This document shows, in pieces, positions 27,755 to 42,900 of a DNA stretch of 64,000 bases (positions within the stretch are counted from its first letter, which is position 1; each line of letters starts with the position of its first letter). Origin of the DNA: Macrostomum hystrix (Eukaryota > Animalia > Platyhelminthes); assembly GCA_950097015.1 (NCBI GenBank), contig CATNEN010000009.1, positions 868,001 to 932,000 of the forward strand, given 5' to 3'. The translations under genes were made by a program, and so were the position numbers. The notes under the pieces were generated by a model. That model ran no database searches. It was not told the DNA's origin and worked only from the letters and a program-made list of their open reading frames with translations.

Positions 27755-28034
27755 CTGCGAATCAGTAGAATCTGTGCTTATCCCCAAGTTCAAACTCAAG
27801 GATCGAAATTTACGCTGCCGAGATTAAATAAAATCTTATGAGAACGCTTTATAGTACCTCCCCTAGGAAACTATTTTATACAAGTTTTTCTTATGAGCTA
27901 CGAGTTACCGATCTGCCACTCGCCCCCTGCAAACGCTCGCATCCACACTCGTTTGAGCAGCACGCTGAGCATATTCTGAGGACATCTCACGCTGCTTCAC
28001 TTGAGGCAATCAAATTCTGGCTCGAATTGACCTG

Positions 28035-28450
28035 CAAGCACCTGTGAGTCTGTTTGCAAGCATCTGTGAGTCTGTTTGCAAGCATCTGTGAGTCTGTTTG
28101 CAAGCATCTGTGAGTCTGTTTGCAAGCACCTGTGAGTCTGTTTGCAAGCACCTGTGAGTCTGTTTGCAAGCACCTGTGAGTCTGTTTGCAAGCATCTGTG
28201 AGTCTGTTTGCAAGCATCTGTGAGTCTGTTTGCAAGCATCTGTGAGTCTGTTTGCAAGCATCTGTGAGTCTGTTTGCAAGCATCTGTGAGTCTGTTTGCA
28301 AGCATCTGTGAGTCTGTTTGCAAGCATCTGTGAGTCTGTTTGCAAGCATCTGTGAGTCTGTTTGCAAGCATCTGTGAGTCTGTTTGCAAGCATCTGTGAG
28401 TCTGTTTGCAAGCACCTGTGAGTCTGTTTGCAAGCATCTGTGAGTCTGTT
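28035..28450. repeat. 22-bp minisatellite TCTGTGAGTCTGTTTGCAAGCA
   Basis: About 18 copies; explains three overlapping minus-strand ORFs. Confidence 0.95.
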
Positions 28451-30189
28451 TATTTCCAGCGCCGACAAAGAAAGCTCATTCCAAACTGGCGATGGCCTTT
28501 TGAATCAGTGAATCAGTGAAAATCGGTGAATTTCCCAGCGGGGTTCTGCCGCATCCGGCCTTATTGAAATCCTCAAAGCACATTCATTGTCCCATAAAGT
28601 CACCTCAGCAAATACGGGCTGCAGAGCAGTTCCAGGTAAAATTGGCGCAAGACTGACAGGTCATCCAGCTGCGCCTTTGAAAGCGCCAGGACTTGTAGCA
28701 ACTTTTCTGCCAGCCTTCTTGATCATCTAAAATTCTGATCTTCTTAAACGTACGCGAGCGCATACTGAAAACTTCATGAGCAGAGAATGTTTCCTCCAAT
28801 ATAAAAATTCATAATTGCAGCTTGTTTTAGGGGTAAGCTGTCGTCACGCATTCAGCAAGCCGCTGAGAGGAAGCACCTCACTTGCTTACAATGTCCCCTT
28901 GGGCCCTTGAGCTACCGGGGCAGGCCATGGGTTAACACTCAGGGGCACAATTATCTCACCATTTCCCTACAACTGACCAAGAATTACGAGTAACTGCTGC
29001 CTTCCGCTTTGATTGAGAAGTGAAAGGATTTTCTGATCAGCCCTGATAAAGAGCAGCTGATGGTGAATGGCAGTGCTCAATTCAGCAAGCACTTAATACA
29101 GTTATAGCGTGACAAGAACTACTGGAATTCTGGATATACTAGAAATTCTGAAATCACGTGATCTCCACAGAAAGATCTTCTAAAAATAGAAACAAAGCAA
29201 TTCATCCCTCCTTAGCCAATCAGAACTTCAAGGCCGAACTAACACCAACTTTGAGCGAGGTGCGCTTCTTAAACAGTACTTGGTAGCCCCAGTAGGTAAG
29301 TTCGTACAAAAACTCAAATTAAAGTCCTGAGACCAAACGAACTCAGAAGGACATGAGCAGTGAAGGTGCTGCAGATCTTGTGGCTTCTGACCACGGGAAA
29401 TTCAGTTACGAACAGCGCTGATTAAATAAATTCTCTTTGTACCCTCGTGGAGAAGCTTTGAAGGTTGCTGAGAGTTGCAGCTGGCACGAAAACTGAGAAC
29501 AAATTATCGACCCAAATCAGCATCTTGTAGACAATATCGACGCCTCATCTGAACCTCAGTCGGTCTTAATTTGGGCCACTGAATGCAGGAATAGCCGAAG
29601 GAATTAAGTTGCGAAGCGAGCAACCACCTGACCTAATTCGGCCTGGGACATTGTGAAGTTTGGCATTTCTCATTTGAATAGTCGTATACGAAGATGCCTA
29701 AAATAAGATTGAATTTGTAATGCTTCACCTTTGGCATGTTCAAAGCTACAAAAATGCAAAGAAACAACGGCAAGCCATTGAATAATTTCCTAGGGAAATA
29801 AATAATAATACTCGAACAACAAGTTCTGATTGACAGCTGCAACCTAAGCCCCGATTATTGAACGTTCAACTTATTTTGACGATAATACTGGACGTCAAAT
29901 GGCAGGTAACGAGTTGCGTCAGTCAGTAAAAGTGCAGCCGCGGCCAGTGTCACCTGACGCGGTGCAAAATTAATGCGTTCCGTGACGCAAATTCCACAGT
30001 CTTAATTCGCAATGTCATTAAAATCTGATTCAGCTAGCAACTCCTGGGGGATTGTCTGGGGCATCGGAACTCTTGGGAGTTTTATTTAACCTGTGATACA
30101 AATTATTTTCTATTCTCAGATCTCCCATCCTCTCAGATCTCCCATCCTCTCGGATCTACCATCCTCTCAGATGCCCATCCTCTCCCTGA

Positions 30190-30672: not shown

Positions 30673-31823
30673 CTAAAAGCTTACAGTTTGAAGTTGTCGC
30701 CTGCAAGCAAACAGCATTGTCGCCATTGAGATCTGCTGATGTCTGAAAGCAGAGAGTCCACCCATTTGCTGCGGTCCGTCAATTTAAAAAACTAACTTGT
30801 TGCAGGAAATCGTGAGGCCTGGCCGCGGCATTAGCGACCCCTGAAGCTCTCTCGCCTGTCTCTGGCACCGGCGATGGATGAAGCGAAGTGATTGACACTG
30901 AGGCAATGGGCGCTAATGCGGCCCTCCGGCTCTGAGTGGCTGCCCTCCGGCCGATGATGGAGCGGCCCGCGGTCGCGTTGCAAAAACACTCGCCGCGGGA
31001 CTGTTTGCCGAGGGCAAACACCGACGCCACCGCCGCCGGCGCCACCGGGCCCGCTAAGCCAGCATTTCTCATGCCACGGTCATTGTGTTATTGCCGTTAC
31101 CTTCTCAGCCGAGAAGATGTCTTAGCGAATCGCTAACCCTAGCCAGGCTCTACTGGACAGGTCGAGGTCTGAGCCGTGTTTGTCCACCATCTGCCCCCCC
31201 AACCGAAATGATTGCTTCTGGGCTTTTTATAAAACACATTGCCACAATGAGAATAGTGACAGATTATGACGAGCACATCCTGATGGGATAATTGCTTTCT
31301 GGCAATTAGCGACGCCAAGGAGCAGCAGACAGGTTGGCTTTCTTGTTTTTGACCGACAATGCTGGCGAAATTTCCTCCAAAGCCCAGACGCACCGATGGG
31401 ATTTTGTTCCCCTGTCAATCAAAATTCGCCCCCGCTCCGGTCCTGAGCAGCTCCGCTTTCCGCTCTCCCGTCTCGGCTTTCCAGCAGCGCCGTCTAATTC
31501 CTACAAGAGCTAGTAAGCTGCGAGTCCTGCTGATTGAGCCCATAGGAAAACAATAAGGATTCCAGGAAACCGGCCTGAGTACCCTGCTCAATTTGAACAG
31601 GCCGCAGCAGAAGCTGCAGAAAATCTGTGATAAATTTGCCGACTGCTCAACGGAGCCATTGAGACGAACTCTGCCACGGCCTGCACTGTTTATTTTGAAT
31701 TCAAAATCGCCAGCTTCTTCCACGGGTCTTTGGATGCCTGCATGGCGTAATGGGAATCATACAGACAATGAGAGTTCACTGAAAGATGAGTCTGCCATCA
31801 GTTCCTGGTACCTCTGCTCTCCT

Positions 31824-32738
31824 CTACTCGGTGGGCGGCACTTTTCGCTTCATCATCAACGGGTCAAACCTCTTCATCATCAGCGGGTCGAACTTCTTCA
31901 TCATCAACGGGTCGAACCTCTTCATCATCAGCGGGTCGAACCTCTTCATCATCAGCGGGTCGAACCTCTTCATCATTAGCGGATCGAACTTCTTCATCAT
32001 CAACGGGTCGAACTTCTTCATCATCAACGGGTCGAACCTCTTCATCATTAGCGGGTCGAACTTCTTCATCATCAACGGGTCGAACCTCTTCATCATCAAC
32101 GGGTCGAACCTCTTCATCATCAGCGGGTCGAACCTCTTCATCATTAGCGGATCGAACTTCTTCATCATCAGCGGGTCGAACCTCTTCATCATTAGCGGAT
32201 CGAACTTCTTCATCATCAACGGGTCGAACCTCTTCATCATCAACGGGTCGAACCTCTTCATCATTAGCGGGTCGAACTTCTTCATCATCAACGGGTCGAA
32301 CCTCTTCATCATCAACGGGTCGAACCTCTTTTGGTCGTCCTCATCATCAGACTCCCCGAGTTCAGCAGCTTTGGACACCTGGAATGGATCGGCAGAAGCG
32401 AATGTACTTGAGCTGGATGGCTTTGACTGCCTCTGAATGTGCTTCGGGCTGTTGTCTGGAATCGAGCCCTAATGACTTTTTCATGTTGGCCGATCGTGAG
32501 CACTTTGAAGGAGCCAATTAGAAAAGGCACCATAAGATCAAAACGAATTTGAGCTCAAATATTGACTCTTGTAACCCGGCTAATGCTCAGCCTCAACCCG
32601 GGCCTGCACTTTATTGAGCAGTGACGAATCTCCAGTGCTGGCAGCCCCAAGACTAACCTCGCAGCGGGCGATCGCAGCGCTCAGCAGGATGATCAGCAGG
32701 CAGTTGGCCAGGTGGCCGCGGCAGAAGCTGGCCCGCAT
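31824..32738 (-). CDS. Neuropeptide precursor: signal peptide, acidic spacer, 20 x FDPLMM flanked by KR/KK; exon 1 32658-32738, exon 2 31824-32378 (alternative in-phase acceptor at 32432)
   Basis: Exon 1 encodes MRASFCRGHLANCLLIILLSAAIARC-E, followed by the donor GTTAGT. Exon 2 is in phase 0: VSKAAELGESDDEDDQ-(K[R/K]FDPLMM)x20-KRKVPPTE*. Differences between the 24-bp units only switch KR/KK or are synonymous. Confidence 0.82.
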
Positions 32739-33886
32739 GGCAGGTAGGCTTGTCCTGGTGAGTCTGAGCTGGTCTCCGGGACTTGGCTTGTCAGTACAGA
32801 AGGAGAGTCTGCGGAGCACGATTGCGTGAGCGCCCAAATGGTCATTTTTCCAATTTTATCCCCGCTACCCCCATTGTTCGCAGGCCTGACTGTCGGGCAG
32901 CAGAGGAGTCTAAAAAAACAACAGCAGCTCCAAAGTGGCCGCCGAGCTCCAAGGAGAAGCGCCGGCACTGACAAAGCTGCTGGCGTGCTGGTTCACGGAG
33001 GGCTGGAGCTGGCAGAAGTCTCCAGTTAATTATTCAGCCTCATCATTTGCAAATGCAATGCAGCAGGGCCAGGCTGGAAGGAGACCCGCGGGAAGGGCCG
33101 CACGCAGCCGGCAACAATTCACTAGCGGCTTGTGGGCGATGAATTTTTCATGGCTGCTTGCCCCTCAGCAACTCAAAATTATCCCAGACGCCGGAGCACA
33201 AACAAGCCATAAAGATTTGGGAGAACGGACAAGGGATTAGGAGTGGTCGGGATCGATTTCCGAGGATAAACTCAGCGAGGAGTTGTCCAGACAAACGGCA
33301 GGTGGAATTTGATATTCACCTGCGCTGCCGTTAACAACAAAGAAAGAGCGACTTTCATGTCCGTATCTGGGGGACAGCGGGAGTCACAGGGCTAACCATG
33401 ATCCCCAACCCGAGGGGGATTTGGGCCTTATTATCCAACATCGGGATCGATCAGTAGAATAATCTTTCAAAGCGTTCTTATCGGAGCCACTTCAGACTGC
33501 TCAGAAACTGCTCAAGTGCAACCGCTTCCTTGAGCTTGACTGTCACTAATGGCTTCCCAGCCTCCGCTCTCTGGCGTGCCCGGGCCGCAAGCTCACCTGA
33601 CTCTCGCACAGAAGGCCGTCAGCGATGGGGCGCGCGTCGATTTGCAGCAGTTTTCACTTTTATGGGGGCCGCTTCCTTCCTCCGCTGGCGCTCCGTGCGC
33701 CACGGCCGACCCGGGCTAGAAATAGCGGGGGACCGGCGGGGGAGGGGGGGTGGCGGGCGGTGGGGCGGCTCTCCGGCCACTGATGGAGCTGCTACGCATT
33801 GTCACGGGAAGTGCGAGAGTTCAGACTGCAGACTTCGGGCCACCGGGATGCGTGGTATTGTAGCAAGGACACACTGGGCTCAGATC

Positions 33887-34290
33887 CTGTCTGAGGGGCT
33901 CAGATCCTGTCTGAGGGCTCAGATCCTGTCTGAGGGGCTCAGATCCTGTCTGAGGGCTCAGATCCTGTCTGAGGGGCTCAGATCCTGTCTGAGGGCTCAG
34001 ATCCTGTCTGAGGGGCTCAGATCCTGTCTGAGGGCTCAGATCCTGTCTGAGGGGCTCAGATTCTGTCTGAGGGGCTCAGATTCTGTCTTGAGGGGCTCAG
34101 ATCCTGTCTGAGGGGCTCAGATCCTGTCTGAGGGGCTCAGATCCTGACGAGGGGGTCAGATTCTGTCTGAGGGGCTCAGATTCTGTCTTGAGGTGCTCAG
34201 ATCCTGTACGAGTGGCTCAGATTCTGTCTGAGGGACTCAGAGTCTGTCTGAGGGGTTCAGATCCTGTACGAGGGGGCCAGATTCTGTACG
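33887..34290. repeat. Minisatellite of alternating 19/20-bp units GCTCAGATCCTGTCTGAGG(G), forming a 39-bp higher-order repeat
   Basis: Direct read; each unit contains the inverted repeat CTCAGA/TCTGAG. Confidence 0.9.
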
Positions 34291-35014
34291 AGGGAGGGGT
34301 CCAGACTCGGTGTAATGGGCCCGAATTTCCAATGGGTTCGGGTTCTGTCTAATAAATTCGAATTCTGGCTAATTAGTTTACAAATCATGTCGCCACGTGA
34401 CAGAGGGGTCGAGCTGTCTTCGATATCAGCGGCAGCCGAGAACGGACTACGGTGGAACCCGGACGTGGTTGGCCGGCAACATCAGCCTCCTAAACACCTG
34501 AGTTAAGTTTCTACAATCCAAATTAATGGGAATGAAGACGAGGCGATGCCAACTGAGTTTCCTGCTCCGCCGCCAACCCCAGATCGGGCGCAGCAGAAAT
34601 TGAATTTTCCCCCACCGAGAAGGCCGGCTCCGGCCAGTCAGAGGATCATGAGCGCGGAGGGAAATTCGGCCAAGTAGCCGGGAGGCGGAAGAGATGCCAA
34701 GCCTCTCGGAGCCAAAGGATTTGGCAAGAGGGCTTGCAAATCCGCATAATTCCATTGGTAGCCGCGGTTTGGCGGGGCCGGTGCACAAAGAGAGGCGGGT
34801 CGCGCCGCTGTTGAGGACCAGCTGAATTCAGCCCGGAGCTGGTAACTTCAGCAAGCAAGGACTCGGAAGGACTCAAAATCCCAGAAGAGCTCGCGATGCG
34901 TTCGCAACCCTAATATGTGGCCAACTTTAGCGCCCATGTTCTATCGAGATACAAGAGTGCATCTCGTTAAAGTGAAAAGGGCTTAGGAGGTAATGGCGAA
35001 TATAATATGAGAAT

Positions 35015-35500
35015 GGGAGATGAGGATAACAGGAGAATGGGAGATTAGGATAAGACTAAAGAGGAGAATGGGAGATGAGGAAAAAAGGAGAATGGGAGAT
35101 GAGGAAAAAAGGAGAATGGGAGATGAGGAAAAAAGGAGAATGGGAGATGAGGAAAAAAGGAGAATGGGAGATGAGGAAAAAAGGAGAATGAGAGATGAGG
35201 AAAAAAGGAGAATGGGAGATGAGGAAAAAAGGAGAATGGGAGATGAGGAAAAAAGGAGAATGGGAGATGAGGAAAAAAGGAGAATGGGACATGAGGACAA
35301 CAGGAGAATGGGTGATGAGGACAACAGGAGAATGGGAGATAAGGATAACAAGAGAATGGGAGATGAGGATAACAGGAGAATGGGAGATGAGGATAACAGG
35401 AGAATTGGAGATGAGGATAACAGGAGAATTGGAGATGAGGATAACAGGAGAATTGGAGATGAGGATAACAGGAAAATGGGAGATAGGACAAAGGGGACAA
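35015..35500 (+). repeat. 21-bp purine-rich minisatellite GGAGAATGGGAGATGAGGAAA-type
   Basis: Direct read; open in several frames. Confidence 0.9.
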
Positions 35501-36945
35501 GGGAGGTATGGGCAACATGGGAGTAGGGTGGAGAGAAATAGAAAACGCGAGATAGGGATAATCTTGCAAAAATTGGGAGATGGGGATAATTGAGGAGAAT
35601 GGGAGATTTGCGGGTTTAGAATAGGGTTTGGATAGCTGAGATAAATTGAGATGGGATATGAGCAAGCGACGACATAGTGATCAAACACACAAAGGGTTAG
35701 TGATTGACGTGAAGTTGTCAAAAGAGTTAGGTCTCAGGGTCACTGAGGCACAAAGGGCAGTTTGAGCAAAGAAACAAGAGGCACAAAGCCGCTAGCTGGT
35801 CAGATGTTTGTCAACTGGTTGGCGTGAGGCTGTTATATTAGTTTTTTTGCTTTCGTGTATTTCGCAGATTTTTATTTTGCCCGGCCGCCGACAGCGGGGA
35901 GACGGCGCGGAGCGGGCAGATCAAAGGAGGGTGGGCGGCTTCTGGCAACAACGACAAAGAAATGATGGCCCTGATACGAAAGTCACACGCCTGGGACAGG
36001 TGGCCGGATTTACAGCTTGAGACAGACAGCGGGTGGAGGCGGAGAACACCGAGACGGACACAGATTTACAATAATAGTAGCAGCAATAACACTAGTAATA
36101 TAGCTGATAATAGACAAACAAAAGGTACAGCAGCCAACGCAGGCGCAGAGAATCAAATTCATAAGAATAGCAGTATTAATTATTAGTATGATTATTATTA
36201 ATAGTCTTGCTTTGTGCGACAAGTACAGCGCGCTGCCAGAGAGACACAGGTGGGGGCGGGCAGCGGAATTTGCAGGAATTCTGCGCAATGCGATCCAGGT
36301 AAAAAAGGTGACAGCATATAAAATGTTCGGACTGGACACAAACTCACTTCGGCGTTGGGTAGCAACAATGATGAGGGAGGGAGCACAAAAGCTTGAGAAC
36401 ATTTGAGAAGAGCAAAGCACACGGTTAACAAGCAATAAGGGAGAGGCTGGGCGGCTGCGATATGCGACAATTGCAGCTGCTTTGCAATCTACACGAGGAT
36501 AACTGTGCAAAAAGTTTCAGGGATCTCACAGTGGATAGGTGCGGCCAGTTTTTTCCTCACTTGAGCTCCCTATTCATTTCCATGCCCCGCAGTTCGGGCG
36601 GGGCGCACTCTTGCGATTCAAAAAAGTCCATCTTCGGGCCAGGCCAGAGGCTCGCTTTTTTTTCAAGTGGCCTCTCTAAAGAAACAGAAGAAAAACGTCG
36701 CCTTCTAAAAGAAGAACAGATGAAGCCAGGCGCAGCTGGGACTGGGCAGGTTGATGAAGCATTGATGGCAGATGAAGCACACAAATAAAACAAACACGGA
36801 CACATAATGCACAGGGATGGGAAGGGCCAGTCACAATGGCTGCGGACTGAGCAGAGAGGACGGGCAGCTCAGAGTCACACACAGCAAAACGGGAGCGAGA
36901 GTTCTCGCTTAAGTCCTCATCCAAGAGCCACCGTAGCGGCGCCGG

Positions 36946-39900
36946 TCACGGCGAGTTGATGGCCGACACCGGCGGCGGGCCGTTGGCCATCGGGTTGGGC
37001 GCGGCGACGGAGGCGGCCGCAGCCGAAGGAGTCGGGACGCCGCTGGCGACCGAGGAGGCAACAGAGGTGACGGCCGCGGAGGCGGCACCTGGCAGCGGCA
37101 TCGGCGGCGGCAGCCGGAAGCCGGGCACGCAGGAGCGGGCCACGGACTCCAGGAGCCTGCGAGGCGGCAGAGTGAAGGACGAAGCGGATTGCGAAATTGA
37201 AATAAACTTTTAAATAATCGAAGATAAATATTTACTGCGCGATATCATAATACGTGCAAGACAAGGAATAGAAGGCCCCAGGACAGTGAGAAGGATAGAA
37301 CTCAGGACAATGAGAAGGGTTGGACTCAGGAGAGGGAGAAGGATTGGACTCAGGACAATGAGAAGGATTGGACTCAGGACAGGGAAATCTGCAAAAAACA
37401 GGAAATCTCAAAGTCACAGTGCAACACCCACGCAGCTGCTTAAACTTCGGCCTTTCGATGTCAATCAGATTATGAAGGATGAGGATTAAAAAACCTGACA
37501 GCCGTGGAAGGGGATCGCACCAGATCCCGCGTGAATAATGACAGCATGTCCTTGCTGAGGTAGGGTGTGGCAAGATGTCACTACCGAGCTAAAGGATTAG
37601 GTGGATGGGAAAGTGGAGTAGCTATTTAAGCGCTCTCAGGTAATCCAGTTAGGATTCCCACTCAGAGTCCGCTCGCTTCAAGGAGTTGTCAAAGGAAAGC
37701 CGAGTCTCAGTTCTTTTGCGCAGGCACGCTTCCAAGACGTCGGTCGGGCTGGCGCAGGGGGGAGGTTCTCACAATTGTGTGGCGCATGAGACGATGACCA
37801 AGCAGGTTAATTAATCCGCGGAAGCCAATTAGCAGCAGCAGCTGACCTAGGAACTAATTTTAGAGTACAAGCTAGGACAAATGGATAAACGAGGGTCCAT
37901 CTAGACAAAAAGGCTGCATGGCTGAGCGCATTGCACCAGCCGCCCACCTACTCGCATGTGCTCAGAAATACCCTTGGAGCACATTGGAGCAGAATTCGTG
38001 GCAAATATGCAACAGGCGCCATCTTCCCAATTACTGCCGCCATTCCCGAGGCTATTATCCGAGTAGAAAGCTGAAAAAACACTGATGGGATTTCAGGGGA
38101 TCCCACCTGACCGACGAGCCATGGCTAGCGTAGAAAATAGCTTACGAGCTACACGGCTAAGCGGCCACCAACTTGGCAACAATGCCAGCTCAAACTTATT
38201 AGAGATGGCGGGCTGAGGCGAAAAGCAGACAGGCCTCAGCAGATGAAATGCAGCAACAAAAAACCCCAGCTCGCACAATTTCCTGCCGCTGAGCACATTG
38301 AATAGCAATATTAGCAATATTTACAGTTTTGTGGTTAATTGCTCACAGGGGACAGTATAAACAATGCAGGCCACCGAAATTGCTGCTCAACATTATAATA
38401 AAGCAAGCTGAGCCCGTCACCCGTCAGCTGCCGGATTCCAGACAGCTGGGATCGAAGTTATCCCCAGTTTATTATCCCATTGTCATGGACCTGGGATATG
38501 GGATGTGACGGCAATCTCGTAGTCTCGAGAATCAAGGCGATAATTAGAAGCTAGCGAACACAAATATCTAGTCACATGCGACCTTAATTAACCCATAACA
38601 TTGACAGCTAACACAGATGAGCAATTTAGACTCACTTTTCAATGTGCGGCGAGCAGCGCACGAACTCGTGATCCCAGAACCGGTAACTGGGATTCTTCAG
38701 CAGCTCCGTGAAGGTCAGCAGCAGGCCCCAAGGATGCGGCCGGTTTACAATCAGGCGCTCCAGCAGCACCCTGCAAAGATGGCGGACAGGTGGAGAAGGA
38801 CACTGAACTTAGTTGCGCCCAGATACGTAGCCGTCATTTACATACGGTTAATCACAGGTTTTGAGTACACCAAACCAATGACAGTTTATCCCTGTCTCTG
38901 AGTACACCAATTCAATGACAGTTTATCCCTGTCTCTGAGTACACCAATTCAATGACAGTTTATCCCTGTCTCTGAGTACACAAATTCAATGACAGTTTAT
39001 CCCTGTCTCTGAGTACACAAATTCAATGACAGTTTATCCCTGTCTCTGAGTACACAAATTCAATGACAGTTTATCCCTGTCTCTGAGTACACCAATTCAA
39101 TGACAGTTTATCCCTGTCTCTGAGTACACCAATTCAATGACAGTTTATCCCAGTCTCTGAGTACACAAATTCAATGACAGTTTATAACAGTCTCTGAGTA
39201 CACCAATTCAATGATAGTTTATCCCTGTCTCTGAGTACACCAATTTAATGACAGTTTATCCCTGTCTCTGAGTACACAAATTCAATGACAGTTTATAACA
39301 GTCTCTGAGTACACCAATTCAATGACAGTTTATCCCTGTCTCTGAGTACACAAATTCAATGACAGTTTATAACAGTCTCTGAGTACACCAATTCAATGAC
39401 AGTTTATCCCTGTCTCTGAGTACACAAATTCAATGACAGTTTATAACAGTCTCTGAGTACACCAATTCAATGACAGTTTATCCCAGTCTCTAAGTACACA
39501 AATCTCATGAAAATTAGCCTTAGGCCTTACCTGGTGATCTGCTCCTTGATCTGCTCATTGTTGCTTTCGCGGAAGAAGAAGAGCAAGATTTGGTTAAAGT
39601 AGAAGGTGTGCGAGTTCGGATAGCGCAGCTGGTTGGCCATGGCGTTGAGCAGGAGGTAGCGGCCCTCAGTGCAGCAGAGCATGACCAGAGCCTGCAGAGT
39701 CTCAGTCTCAACGCAGTGAGTCATGTTGTAGGGCTGCAGCGAGTTGCCGCTCTCGTTGATGCGTTTGACAGCCCGCCGGCCGACGTACAGCACCAGGGCG
39801 TTGGTCAGCTCGATGTGGTAGCGCCGGCCCTCCTCGCCGTCATCAGCCCGGATGCGGCTCTGCACATCGGTGAGGAACTGCACCGGCTTGCGGGTGGCCA

Positions 39901-42900
39901 GATAGCCGTCCACTTCCTCGCGCAGCTTGGCGGGGATGTTGGTCTCCAGGCCAGCGAAGGAGCCGCGCGGCTCCACCTGCATCTCCGGCAGGGCGAGGCA
40001 CTGCGAGGCCGGGCTCTGGATGGGGTCCAGCAGCTGGACGAACTTCGGGAAGGCCGACAGAATGAGATTGCGCAGCTGGATGCAGTTGGCAGGGATCACG
40101 TCGCACAGGGCATGGTGGTACTCGCTGATAAAGTCGGGAAAGTCGTGCAGCAGCACCAGGATGAGGCGCAGGGTGCCGCGGTACAGCAGGTGCACAGTCT
40201 TGATAAAGTTGGCGCTGGCCAAGAAGGGCGCAATGAACTTCAGCAAGTCAACCAGCAGCTGGGCGTACATGGACCAGGCGGCCGGAGTGCTCAGGTATTT
40301 GGACAGTACGGACCGGTGCGAGATGCACTCCACCTGTGTGCGGTCAGAGTAACATTTAGTCAGCGAAGCTGAAGCTGAAGGACTCAAGCTGTCTGAGAAA
40401 TGTTTAAAAAATCTGACTCGAATGACAGAGCTTGCGGAGCTGCTAATTGCTGTGTTTGGGCATTGCTTAGGGAGCCATAATTTGCAGGTAAAAGTGTGGG
40501 CCCACAATGTACCCAATCAGGGATTCCCAACTCGATCGTCAGCCCACAGGGTACAAAATAAATCTGAGATTTCAAACTCAATCGTGATCCCAAAAGCACC
40601 TAAACCGGTGATTCTCCAGCTACTCACCCAGCTGTAGGTGAAGGATGGCGCCTTGGCGGGTCGCACAATGTGCAGCGCATTGGCGAAGGCTGCCAGCATG
40701 GGTACAGTCAGTGAGGCCAGAGCGCTGGTCTGAGGACTGTCGGCATCGGCGGGCCCCGGGCAGAGCAGCTCGCTGAACAGCAGGACGAAGATGCGCTGGA
40801 ACGGCATGGGATGGAATCGGTCGGACCGGATGTCCTGCTCCTGCAGCAGCGTGCCGGAGATGATGCCGAGGATCTTGTTCAGCAGGTTTATCTTTGTGCT
40901 GGCGTTGAACTCGCGCTCCCGCTGAGTGTCGGAGGCAGCAGCGGCGGCGGCCTGCTCTCCGCTGTGCTTCACCATCACGGCAATCAGGCGGATGTAAGCG
41001 TCCAGTTCTTGGTAGCAGCTGACGCGGTTGCTGAGCACCTCTTGGCCGGACTTAAGCAGGGCACGGAAGCAGTGCTCCATCACATAGTCAGTTGTAAGGC
41101 GGAAGAATCTGAGGATTAGATTAAAGCGGCTTTGCTTTAATTATGCGTTATGCTATGCGATCTTAAAAGTGCAATACAATGGGAGTGCTTGAATGATGCA
41201 TGAAGGCTTTGAGATGAACCTGTGAGCAATGATCCAGCAAGTCTCACCTGGTGATGATATCGTCAGTCTTCAGGATGCCAAACTGCGTCATCTCCTTGAC
41301 GAAAGTATTGAACCCACGCTGATCCACCACCCGCTGGGCATTGTACAAGAGGTACCATCTCTTCATGAGGCTCTCGCTGGCCTCCTGCAGCCAGTGGGGA
41401 TCGTCAAACTCCCTGGCCTGCGAGCAGCCGCTGTACAGGTAAGTGGTGGCGGGCTGCTGATGGGCCTCAAGCAGGCCAAAGTCCAACAGGCCGCGCACCT
41501 GGTGGCAGACGCGGACAAACTCAGGTGGCACGTGGCCAGCCGGTGATTTCTCGATGAGATGGGTGAGCACGGCAATTGTGCCAGTGAGGTCGCATTCGTT
41601 GAGCACAGTCTGCTCGCGACTATCGCTGAGCACCAGGGCGTGGAACAGGTCCATGACGAAGCGGAGTGCGCGCAGGTTGCTCTGGCGAATCTGCTTGGCA
41701 AGGTGAGAGTCCACAGCCTGCAGGCTGACGATGTGAATCTTCAGCAGCTCAATGAAGGCGTCGCTGTTCCACTTGTGCGGCTCAGGCATGTCAGTCCAGA
41801 TCTGAGTGACCACGTGACTCATGCAGCTGGAGTAGCCCAGGCCGCTGAGTTTGGGCTGGTACATAAGCCGCAGCACCACAGTGTGCGCCTCCTTGTAGCG
41901 CTCCAGCACCTCCTGTGGAAAGTGCGCCTGCATCGCCTGCCGGCGAAACGTCTGGAACAGCGACTGGACTGCCGCCTTTACAACATCGCTGGCGCAGGCG
42001 TCATTAGCGGTAGCCTTGGCAACCTGAGCGCGCTCAACTAGCACGCGAAGGCGCTGCACGAGCTGGCCGCTGTCGCCGATGCCGGAGCCAGCGGCAGCAG
42101 CAGCCGTTGAAGTCGGCGGCTGGGCCACGCTGGGCGAGTTGGCGATGTACTGTGACTGGCGCTCGACTTCGGCCACGATGGTGTCAAAAAGCTGCGCAAC
42201 CTCGTTGCGGTGCTGCGGCTGGGGCGCGGCCTGCGCCGTCGGCTGCGGCTGTGGCTGGGCCGGCTGCTGCGCGGTCATCGGAGGCATTGGCGGCGGCACG
42301 GCTGGAGGAGCATCGCTAGCAAAGCCGGGCACGCAGTTGGCGTACTCGGAGTAAACAGCCAGGCTGACCAGAGAAGGCGGGCCAACAGACTTGCGCAGCA
42401 TTGGCGGCATGGAATCATTCTGGTAGGCCATCTGCTGCGGGTCAAAGTAGCGCCTGCCTTCCTGGCGGGCCTGGATGCGGAGCCGGTAATCATTCTCTAG
42501 AGTGACATCTACCTGGATTAGGGCCTTTTCAACGCACATTTTCTGGATGTATGCCGTGCCCAGCTCGAAATTCTCGCTGGCGATGACACGGGCGGCCTCC
42601 TCGATCATCTCCCTCTGCTGGTTGTTGGGCGAGTTGAGCACCTGCAAGAACTGCTGCTTGAGCTTGGTCTCCATGTTGATGCTGAGGGCCTCACGGCAGG
42701 TGATAAGGGCCATTCCGGCGGTGAGGCAGCGGGTCATGTTGTGAGCGGCGGTGCGCAGGTGCCCCTCGTCGTCGTCAAGTGCGAAGTCCTTGCGCACGAC
42801 GCCCTCCACGGTGCCGAGGACGATGCGGACGCAGCGCTGGGACACGGGCTCGAGCAGCTCGCCGACTGTGACCTCCAGGGTCTGGCGGATGGGGGCAGCA

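What the first reader, a model, noticed from the sequence alone, without database searches (positions are those of the whole stretch)
31824..32738. Hidden neuropeptide precursor encoding 20 identical FDPLMM peptides
It looks like one more 24-bp minisatellite, but every unit encodes a dibasic convertase site (KR or KK) plus FDPLMM, and the variation is synonymous or KR/KK only. The array follows an acidic spacer, and an upstream exon supplies a clean signal peptide in the right phase. With no C-terminal Gly, the peptide would be non-amidated. From memory, FDP-hydrophobic-M resembles planarian FDPIMF-type peptides; this needs checking. It may be an undescribed peptide, easily lost to repeat masking, and peptide dose could vary with copy number.
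Basis: partly seen in the sequence, partly recalled or inferred. Interest (0 to 1): 0.82.

Follow-up and report, generated by a model that had tools for sequence, protein, structure and literature searches.

The report
Flatworm 20-copy FDPLMM neuropeptide gene
What looks like a 24-base minisatellite is the main exon of a small two-exon flatworm (Macrostomum-type) gene for a secreted hormone precursor that should release 20 identical FDPLMM peptides. It is a new and probable, but not proven, member of a flatworm neuropeptide family already known from planarians and schistosomes.

Summary
Window 31824-32378 (minus strand) is an open frame with a 16-residue acidic spacer, 20 units of K[R/K]-FDPLMM (13 KR, 7 KK), then KRKVPPTE and a stop. 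Of the five variable bases, four are silent and one swaps R and K.

An upstream exon (32738-32658) encodes a 27-residue signal-like leader. It ends in phase 0 at a GTTAGT donor, and the acceptor at 32378 keeps the frame.

- Macrostomum lignano has a transcript-derived gene (PAA57848.1, named "hypothetical protein") with the same 27-codon first exon ending in CE. It has the same phase-0 intron, an acidic spacer and the identical peptide FDPLMM, in 16 genomic copies.
- This genome holds two paralogues: 26 x FDPLIM, and alternating FDPLYSM / YDPLLA.
Planarian spp-15 (FDPIMF-amide, FDPIQF-amide), planarian spp-16 (QFDPIMY) and schistosome NPP-26 (SYFDPILF and others) are peptides detected by mass spectrometry; spp-15 and NPP-26 are expressed in nervous tissue.

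I file it as a new member of a known kind. Family membership rests on a short motif and the precursor layout, not on statistics. The peptide itself appears in no paper searched. Interest is moderate to low.

The parts
32854..32859 (-). Possible TATA-like element (ATAAAA), 121 bases upstream of the start codon
   Evidence: Sequence only. Weak: no transcription-start data. The nearest upstream ATG (32845) would lie 5' of a start site placed about 30 bases after this element.
32658..32738 (-). Exon 1 coding part: ATG plus 26 codons. A signal-peptide-like leader (basic N-end, 15-residue hydrophobic core, A-I-A, ending ...RCE), ending in phase 0.
   Evidence: Same length (27 codons), same CE end and about 50% identity to exon 1 of the M. 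lignano orthologue, L019 5001-5081. No SignalP was available; the assignment rests on hydropathy and the -3/-1 rule.
32379..32657 (-). Intron of 279 bases, GTTAGT...ttccag, phase 0
   Evidence: The M. lignano orthologue (320 bases, GTGCGT...ctccag) and the paralogue on contig C33 (430 bases, GTAAAT...ctgcag) each have a phase-0 intron at the same place.
32331..32378 (-). Acidic pro-region spacer of 16 residues (VSKAAELGESDDEDDQ)
   Evidence: Spacers of 15-16 residues before the first KR also occur in the M. lignano orthologue (acidic) and in the C33 paralogue.
31851..32330 (-). Array of 20 x 24 bases, each unit K[R/K]-FDPLMM (13 KR, 7 KK). Predicted to release 20 copies of the free-acid hexapeptide FDPLMM.
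   Evidence: There are seven DNA variants of the unit but one peptide.
31824..31850 (-). C-terminal tail KRKVPPTE and TAG stop
   Evidence: The tail is not conserved in M. lignano, which has KRRFLRKLHRLHE.
31689..31694 (-). AATAAA polyadenylation signal, starting 130 bases past the stop codon
   Evidence: Sequence only.

Best explanation
This is a small, intact two-exon gene of a Macrostomum-type flatworm that encodes a neuropeptide-type prohormone.

Shown:
- An open frame with 20 identical FDPLMM units, each preceded by KR or KK.
- Variation that is silent or swaps R and K.
- A leader exon with canonical splice signals in phase.
- An orthologue in M. lignano with the same exon structure and the identical peptide, although leader, spacer and tail have diverged.
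- Two paralogues in this genome with the related peptides FDPLIM and FDPLYSM/YDPLLA.
- A 7B2 gene (the helper protein of prohormone convertase 2) in the genome.

Inferred:
- The leader takes the precursor into the secretory pathway.
- A PC2-type convertase cuts after each KR or KK, and a carboxypeptidase E-type enzyme trims the basic residues.
- Twenty copies of the non-amidated hexapeptide FDPLMM ([M+H]+ 753.33) are stored and released by peptidergic cells, most likely neurons, and act on a G-protein-coupled receptor.

The peptide fits the flatworm FDP-I/L family: planarian spp-15 and spp-16, and schistosome NPP-26. Their peptides have been detected by mass spectrometry, spp-15 and NPP-26 are expressed in nervous tissue, and in schistosomes the peptide has a candidate receptor, SmGPCR20. 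The array is probably kept uniform by unequal crossing-over, while selection holds the peptide constant.
For: Structure and frame.

Selection on the peptide:
- 9 of 11 interior variable sites in four arrays are silent, and the other two are R/K.
- The window unit and the C26 unit differ at 5 of 24 bases, of which 4 are silent.
- FDPLMM is identical in M. lignano, while exon 1 is only about 50% identical and the spacers and tails do not align.
- FDPLIM is likewise shared between contig C26 and M. lignano A0A1I8HH48.

Splice model:
- M. lignano PAA57848.1 (P0040) joins a 27-codon exon ending in CE to an acidic spacer across a 320-base GT-AG intron.
- That GenBank annotation was built only from RNA-seq-based transcripts (PMC5730564).
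- The C33 paralogue has its own signal exon and a phase-0 intron at the same place.

Family, from the literature:
- spp-15 has a signal peptide and 8 x KR-FDPIQF-G plus FDPIMF-G, and is expressed in cephalic ganglia and nerve cords. spp-16 has KR-QFDPIMY-KR and is non-amidated (PMC2953531).
- Sm-NPP-26 free-acid peptides were seen by LC-MS/MS (PMC9495596).
- NPP-26 marks a neuron cluster (PMC11349301).
- NPP26 interacts with SmGPCR20 (PMC10783048).

Processing machinery: 7B2 scores 71.7 bits, over the Pfam cut-off, at C37:2739661-2740137.

Weak support: the language-model neighbours of the orthologue are almost all peptide-hormone precursors, at scores of 0.83-0.86, which count as leads only.
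Against: No statistically significant sequence match to spp-15, spp-16 or NPP-26 was obtained. Two word searches returned only M. lignano proteins and one nematode protein. The best 150 hits of the exhaustive HMMER search were mostly unrelated proteins with 8-residue repeats. The family link therefore rests on a 4-of-6-residue motif plus the precursor layout.

All described family members end in F or Y; this peptide ends in M.

KK sites (7 of 20) are generally cut less well than KR, so some 14-residue double units could persist.

The signal peptide was judged by rule of thumb, not by SignalP.
Confidence: 0.82

Rival explanations
1. The gene is a real secreted multi-copy peptide precursor, but it is not neuronal. 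The peptides would be made by gland, epidermal or reproductive secretory cells and act outside the body or in a mating partner, for example as a pheromone, a seminal-fluid peptide or a defence peptide.
For: Nothing in the sequence specifies a cell type, and no expression data were obtained. The very high number of identical copies suggests bulk production. Weak NPP-26 signal was also reported in apical gland cell nuclei of the schistosome miracidium and in subtegumental cells and parenchyma.
Against: The closest described genes are expressed in nervous tissue: spp-15 in cephalic ganglia and nerve cords and NPP-26 in neuron clusters. A six-residue acidic-hydrophobic peptide is an unlikely antimicrobial. 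Neuropeptide genes with 20-30 copies are ordinary in this genome according to earlier notes of this scan, which I did not check.
Confidence: 0.11
2. The stretch is a non-coding 24-bp minisatellite whose frame is open by chance, and the upstream 'exon' is a coincidence.
For: This genome is full of 24-bp minisatellites. A six-frame search with the array protein returned 119 matches, most of them open repeat frames with no dibasic sites, such as RSDPLIS-type and NRLDPALS-type units. Two antisense frames of this array are also open.
Against: Only the sense frame shows variation that is purely silent or R/K. The same peptide, with its dibasic sites, a signal exon and the intron phase, is kept in another species and in two paralogues, while silent sites and flanks diverge. 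The orthologue is a transcript-derived gene model.
Confidence: 0.02
3. The gene is a silent or decaying duplicate. Its structure is intact, but it is no longer expressed in this species, and the C26 or C33 paralogues carry the function.
For: There is no RNA evidence for this locus. It sits among minisatellites, next to a gene that an unchecked first-reader note calls decayed.
Against: There are no stops or frameshifts in 211 codons. The start codon, splice sites and AATAAA are intact. Variation within the array is still purged of amino-acid changes. The specific peptide FDPLMM, not the paralogues' peptides, is conserved with M. lignano, which argues for a maintained orthologue.
Confidence: 0.05

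Closest known systems
Schmidtea mediterranea spp-15 (FDPIQF-amide x8, FDPIMF-amide) and spp-16 (QFDPIMY); Collins et al. 2010, PMC2953531
   Same: A short precursor with an N-terminal signal peptide, a short pro-piece and tandem copies of a 6-7-residue peptide with an F-D-P-(I/L)-x-hydrophobic core, each preceded by KR. FDPLMM matches FDPIMF at 4 of 6 positions, with I/L and F/M as the two changes. Like spp-16, it has no Gly, so the peptide is a free acid. The planarian peptides are confirmed by mass spectrometry, and spp-15 is expressed in brain and nerve cords.
   Different: Position 4 is Leu, not Ile. The C-terminal residue is Met, not Phe or Tyr. There are 20 identical copies against 9 (spp-15) or about 4 (spp-16). 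spp-15 is amidated. No significant sequence alignment was obtained with these tools; the planarian sequences were seen only in the paper's supplement.
Schistosoma NPP-26 (Smp_071050): SYFDPILF, SYFDPIIY, NFDPILF, EHFDPIIY, TLFNPILF
   Same: Non-amidated FDP-I-x-aromatic peptides cut at basic sites and seen as free acids by LC-MS/MS. It marks a neuron cluster. It is a candidate ligand of the orphan rhodopsin receptor SmGPCR20, and combined knock-down reduces egg production.
   Different: The schistosome peptides carry 1-2 extra N-terminal residues, differ from each other, number about six and end in F or Y. The Macrostomum peptide starts at F, is repeated identically 20 times and ends in M-M.
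Macrostomum lignano PAA57848.1 (BOX15_Mlig023240g1, 'hypothetical protein') and A0A1I8HH48
   Same: PAA57848.1 is the orthologue. It has a 27-codon exon 1 ending in CE, a phase-0 intron, an acidic spacer and the identical FDPLMM units with KR or KK. A0A1I8HH48 carries FDPLIM, like the C26 paralogue here.
   Different: The M. lignano locus read has 16 genomic units (12 KK, 4 KR) against 20 here (7 KK, 13 KR). The deposited CDS keeps only 5 units, apparently from a collapsed transcript. Spacer, tail and half of the leader differ. No shared flanking genes were found within 5 kb.
Caenorhabditis angaria unnamed protein (P0002)
   Same: A signal peptide followed by about 11 short peptides starting with FDP, each preceded by KR or KK. 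It was the only non-flatworm hit carrying the motif.
   Different: The residues after FDP are variable (Y, L, M, T, F) and the peptides are 4-7 residues long. The E-values are inflated by repetition. Homology as opposed to convergence was not tested.

Membership tests
Flatworm FDP-I/L peptide prohormones (Smed-spp-15/-16, Sm/Sj-NPP-26) | Small precursor with an N-terminal signal peptide | tested here: met
   Exon 1 (32738-32658) has a basic N-end, a 15-residue hydrophobic core and A-I-A. The orthologue and the C33 paralogue have equivalent exons. The test was heuristic; SignalP was not available.
Flatworm FDP-I/L peptide prohormones (Smed-spp-15/-16, Sm/Sj-NPP-26) | Several copies of a 6-8-residue peptide with the core F-D-P-(I/L), bounded by basic cleavage sites | tested here: met
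   20 x K[R/K]-FDPLMM, compared with KR-FDPIQF-G, KR-FDPIMF-G, KR-QFDPIMY-KR and R-SYFDPILF-K in the papers. Position 4 is L in all Macrostomum genes and I in all described members.
Flatworm FDP-I/L peptide prohormones (Smed-spp-15/-16, Sm/Sj-NPP-26) | Aromatic C-terminal residue (F or Y). This is shared by all described members but is not a formal criterion. | tested here: not met
   The peptide ends in Met (FDPLMM). The paralogues end in M, M or A. For this reason I call it a probable divergent FDPL branch that works like the family, not a proven member.
Flatworm FDP-I/L peptide prohormones (Smed-spp-15/-16, Sm/Sj-NPP-26) | Statistically supported sequence homology of the precursors | tested here: inconclusive
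   The word searches and the exhaustive HMMER search (best 150 of 483 hits) returned only Macrostomum proteins and one nematode protein with the motif. The planarian and schistosome precursors never came back as searchable ids, so no alignment statistic could be computed.
Flatworm FDP-I/L peptide prohormones (Smed-spp-15/-16, Sm/Sj-NPP-26) | Expression in neurons and detection of the mature peptide | not testable with these tools
No expression or peptidomic data for this species were reachable.
Bilaterian neuropeptide or peptide-hormone prohormone (the general kind) | The bioactive peptide is conserved between species while the signal peptide, spacers and tail diverge | tested here: met
   FDPLMM is identical in M. 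lignano. Exon 1 is about 50% identical, and the spacer and tail do not align.
Bilaterian neuropeptide or peptide-hormone prohormone (the general kind) | Regulated-pathway processing machinery is encoded in the genome | tested here: met
   7B2 (PF05281) scores 71.7 bits at C37:2739661-2740137. PC2 and carboxypeptidase E themselves were not searched.

The most novel reading that the evidence does not exclude
The Macrostomum FDPL genes (three paralogues giving FDPLMM, FDPLIM, and FDPLYSM/YDPLLA) would show that the FDP-peptide system of planarians and schistosomes dates back to the base of rhabditophoran flatworms. Together with the Caenorhabditis angaria FDPx precursor, they would point to an unrecognised protostome-wide FDP-peptide family that signals through GPCR20-type receptors.
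Probability: 0.12. Interest if true: 0.55.

Novelty: new member of a known kind. Interest (0 to 1): 0.35.

Why it matters
It adds a cleanly defined gene, and a three-gene family, to the poorly studied flatworm FDP peptides. Knock-down experiments have linked their relatives to reproduction in schistosomes (NPP-26, a candidate ligand of GPCR20) and to brain regeneration in planarians (spp-15).

Macrostomum is transgenic and amenable to RNAi. A precursor that yields a single peptide species in 20 copies is therefore a convenient handle for finding the receptor and for functional tests.

It also shows that coding arrays can pass for minisatellites, and that transcript-based annotation can collapse them. 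The M. lignano model keeps 5 of 16 units.

Tried and rejected

Joined protein. The joined exon 1 + exon 2 protein was never built or searched.

Pfam. The hits (CdrL_M, Cornifin) are repeat artefacts with no supporting stretch.

Exhaustive HMMER search. Most of the 483 hits are long proteins with 8-residue periodic repeats. Only P0001, P0002 and P0040 carry dibasic-FDP units.

Own-genome protein search. Most of the 119 matches are other 24-bp minisatellites without cleavage sites.

Synteny. tblastx of the 10.9-kb M. lignano locus against the window found only the gene itself and repeats.

C26 paralogue. Its first exon was not resolved. One candidate signal exon lies 4.7 kb upstream, at C26:1318699-1318773, and the M. 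lignano pro-region does not align to it.

Rejected ideas:
- A fungal or protist Kex2-processed repeat peptide or RiPP precursor. I considered this before the genome proved to be a flatworm's.
- Coding on the antisense strand. Those frames show amino-acid variation, and there is no supporting orthologue.
- The alternative acceptor at 32432. It has a weak polypyrimidine tract, and the orthologue and the paralogue both place a 15-16-residue spacer directly after the intron.

Literature strings. FDPLMM, FDPLIM, Mlig023240 and 'Macrostomum + FDPL' gave no relevant paper. Koziol et al. 2016, which names NPP-26, is not held.

Full report
**What is there**

Tandem Repeats Finder reports a 24-bp array at 31848-32330, with 20.1 copies and 91% matches. 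On the minus strand the frame that opens at 32378 reads as follows:
- a 16-residue acidic spacer;
- exactly 20 units of K[R/K]-FDPLMM, 13 KR and 7 KK;
- KRKVPPTE and a TAG stop at 31826-31824.

Seven DNA versions of the unit encode one peptide. Only five unit positions vary. Four are silent (Phe, Asp, and two Leu-codon positions) and the fifth is AGG/AAG, which is R/K inside the basic pair. Of the six reading frames, only this one has two distinct 8-mers. Three frames contain stops, and the two open antisense frames show 4-5 peptide variants.

By chance, at least four silent changes out of five has P = 0.002 counting all changes, or 0.03 counting transitions only. That is suggestive on its own, but not decisive.

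**Gene model**

An ATG at 32738-32736 opens 27 codons with a basic N-end, a 15-residue hydrophobic core and A-I-A, ending ...RCE. The donor GTTAGT follows directly, in phase 0. The acceptor ...ttccag|GTG at 32378 is in phase and has a good pyrimidine tract.

An AATAAA begins 130 bases after the stop codon, at 31694-31689. A TATA-like ATAAAA lies 121 bases before the ATG. The region from 27.5 to 39.5 kb otherwise holds only minisatellite frames, so the gene stands alone.

I left out any step that uses the joined protein.

**Relatives inside the genome**

The assembly (220 Mb, 42 contigs) has two paralogous arrays.
- Contig C26, from 1323455 (+): a spacer, then 26 x KR-FDPLIM.
- Contig C33, 2573127-2574069 (-): a 25-codon signal exon, a GTAAAT donor, a 430-base phase-0 intron, a 15-residue spacer, then one KR-FDPLLST followed by seven pairs of KR-FDPLYSM / KR-YDPLLA. 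The last unit reads YDPLLF.

Their internal variation is also at third codon positions. The consensus units of the window and C26 differ at 5 of 24 bases, and four of those are silent. Silent sites are therefore close to saturated while the peptide differs by one residue.

**The orthologue settles the splice model**

The exhaustive HMMER search was mostly swamped by unrelated proteins with 8-residue repeats. It did return P0040, which is PAA57848.1, 'hypothetical protein BOX15_Mlig023240g1' of Macrostomum lignano.

Its locus, L019 on NIVC01002440.1, shows the following:
- a 27-codon first exon ending ...HCE;
- a GTGCGT donor, a 320-base intron and a ctccag acceptor;
- an acidic spacer;
- 16 genomic units of K[R/K]-FDPLMM;
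- a different tail.

The deposited CDS keeps 5 units, which looks like a collapsed transcript.

Exon 1 is about 50% identical to the window's. The spacers and tails do not align, yet the hexapeptide is identical. The GenBank annotation of that assembly was built only from RNA-seq-based, genome-guided transcripts (PMC5730564). The homologous exon junction is therefore RNA-supported in the sister species.

Pooled over the four arrays, 9 of 11 interior variable sites are silent and the other two are R/K. This gives P = 5e-4 at the transition-only rate; that rate was computed on the window's consensus unit, so the figure is approximate.

**What it is like**

- Collins et al. 2010 (PMC2953531) list mass-spectrometry-confirmed FDPIMF-amide, FDPIQF-amide and FDPIQFG from planarian spp-15. 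The precursor has a signal peptide, a pro-piece, 8 x KR-FDPIQF-G and FDPIMF-G, and is expressed in cephalic ganglia and nerve cords.
- The same paper lists non-amidated KR-QFDPIMY-KR from spp-16. It aligns spp-15 with schistosome npp-26: EHFDPIIY, SYFDPILF, NFDPILF and others.
- The NPP-26 peptides were later seen by LC-MS/MS as free acids (PMC9495596).
- The gene marks a neuron cluster in the miracidium (PMC11349301).
- NPP26 interacts with the orphan receptor SmGPCR20, and combined knock-down reduces egg production and ovary size (PMC10783048).
- spp-15 RNAi impairs planarian brain regeneration (bioRxiv 10.64898/2026.10.10.758126).

FDPLMM shares F, D, P and the fifth-position Met with FDPIMF, and differs by I/L and F/M.

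**How it most likely works**

These steps are inferred from the anatomy and from the family:
1. The signal peptide is removed.
2. A PC2-type convertase cuts after each KR or KK.
3. A carboxypeptidase E-type enzyme trims the basic residues.
4. Twenty free-acid FDPLMM peptides are released per precursor. There is no amidation, because no Gly precedes the basic pairs.

The PC2 helper protein 7B2 is encoded in the genome. The language-model neighbours of the orthologue are almost all peptide-hormone precursors, but at scores that count only as leads.

**Limits on membership**

No significant alignment to spp-15, spp-16 or NPP-26 could be computed. Those proteins never came back from the searches, and Pfam has no model for them. 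All described members have Ile at position 4 and end in Phe or Tyr; the Macrostomum peptides have Leu and end in Met or Ala.

I therefore describe the gene as a probable divergent FDPL branch that works like the family, and as a certain member of the general kind, a multi-copy neuropeptide-type prohormone.

**Novelty and verdict**

The strings FDPLMM and FDPLIM occur in no paper of the searchable library, nor does the M. lignano gene id. Koziol et al. 2016 was not available. Even so, the orthologue is already deposited, unnamed, and the peptide family is known.

This is a sound catch of a real gene hidden in a repeat. It is incremental rather than surprising. Copy number differs between species (20 against 16) and between paralogues (26, 14 or 15).

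Noticed in passing
G000:C29:4114436-4115263 (+), which is L009 1225-2052: An intronless open frame with its own signal-like leader, a long acidic pro-region and about 20 units of F(T/S)PLRG-K(K/R). This would be a separate multi-copy precursor predicted to give FSPLR-amide and FTPLR-amide. The Pfam 'Bradykinin' hit sits exactly at the cut-off and probably reflects only the FSP-x-R motif.
   Followed up: partly
G000:C26:1323455-1324144 (+) and G000:C33:2573127-2574069 (-): Two paralogues of the window gene: 26 x KR-FDPLIM, and alternating KR-FDPLYSM / KR-YDPLLA. The C33 gene has a clear signal exon and a phase-0 intron. The first exon of the C26 gene is unresolved; one candidate lies at C26:1318699-1318773.
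   Followed up: partly
L019 5001-5872 (M. lignano NIVC01002440.1): The deposited CDS of BOX15_Mlig023240g1 has 5 FDPLMM units, while the genome at that locus has 16. This looks like a collapsed short-read transcript laid over the array. The older UniProt entries A0A1I8HH48 ('PSCyt2 domain-containing') and A0A1I8GQH5 ('Mucin TcMUCII') are misnamed fragments of FDPL precursors.
   Followed up: partly
P0002 (Caenorhabditis angaria, unnamed protein product): A nematode protein with a signal peptide and about 11 KR/KK-FDP-x peptides, a look-alike of the flatworm family. Whether this is homology or convergence was not tested.
   Followed up: no
G000:C1:7659848-7660318 (+), L013: A 24-bp minisatellite whose open frame reads RSDPLIS(F/S/C) repeatedly. 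It resembles the FDPLIM unit but has no dibasic site, no start and no leader. It may be a decayed copy or a chance likeness.
   Followed up: no
window 27987-28468, 33876-34287, 34983-35721: Further minisatellites flank the gene. One has a 20/39-bp period (33876-34287). Two others show long repeat frames open in several reading frames. None has cleavage sites or a leader.
   Followed up: no
window 39527-40516 (-): A 329-residue open frame that looks, from memory only, like the C-terminal part of a CCR4-NOT subunit 1-type protein. It is the nearest ordinary-looking coding exon on that side.
   Followed up: no
G000:C37:2739661-2740137 (-): A 7B2 (secretogranin V) homologue, 71.7 bits against Pfam PF05281. 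A weaker second match lies at C10:2462682-2462903.
   Followed up: no
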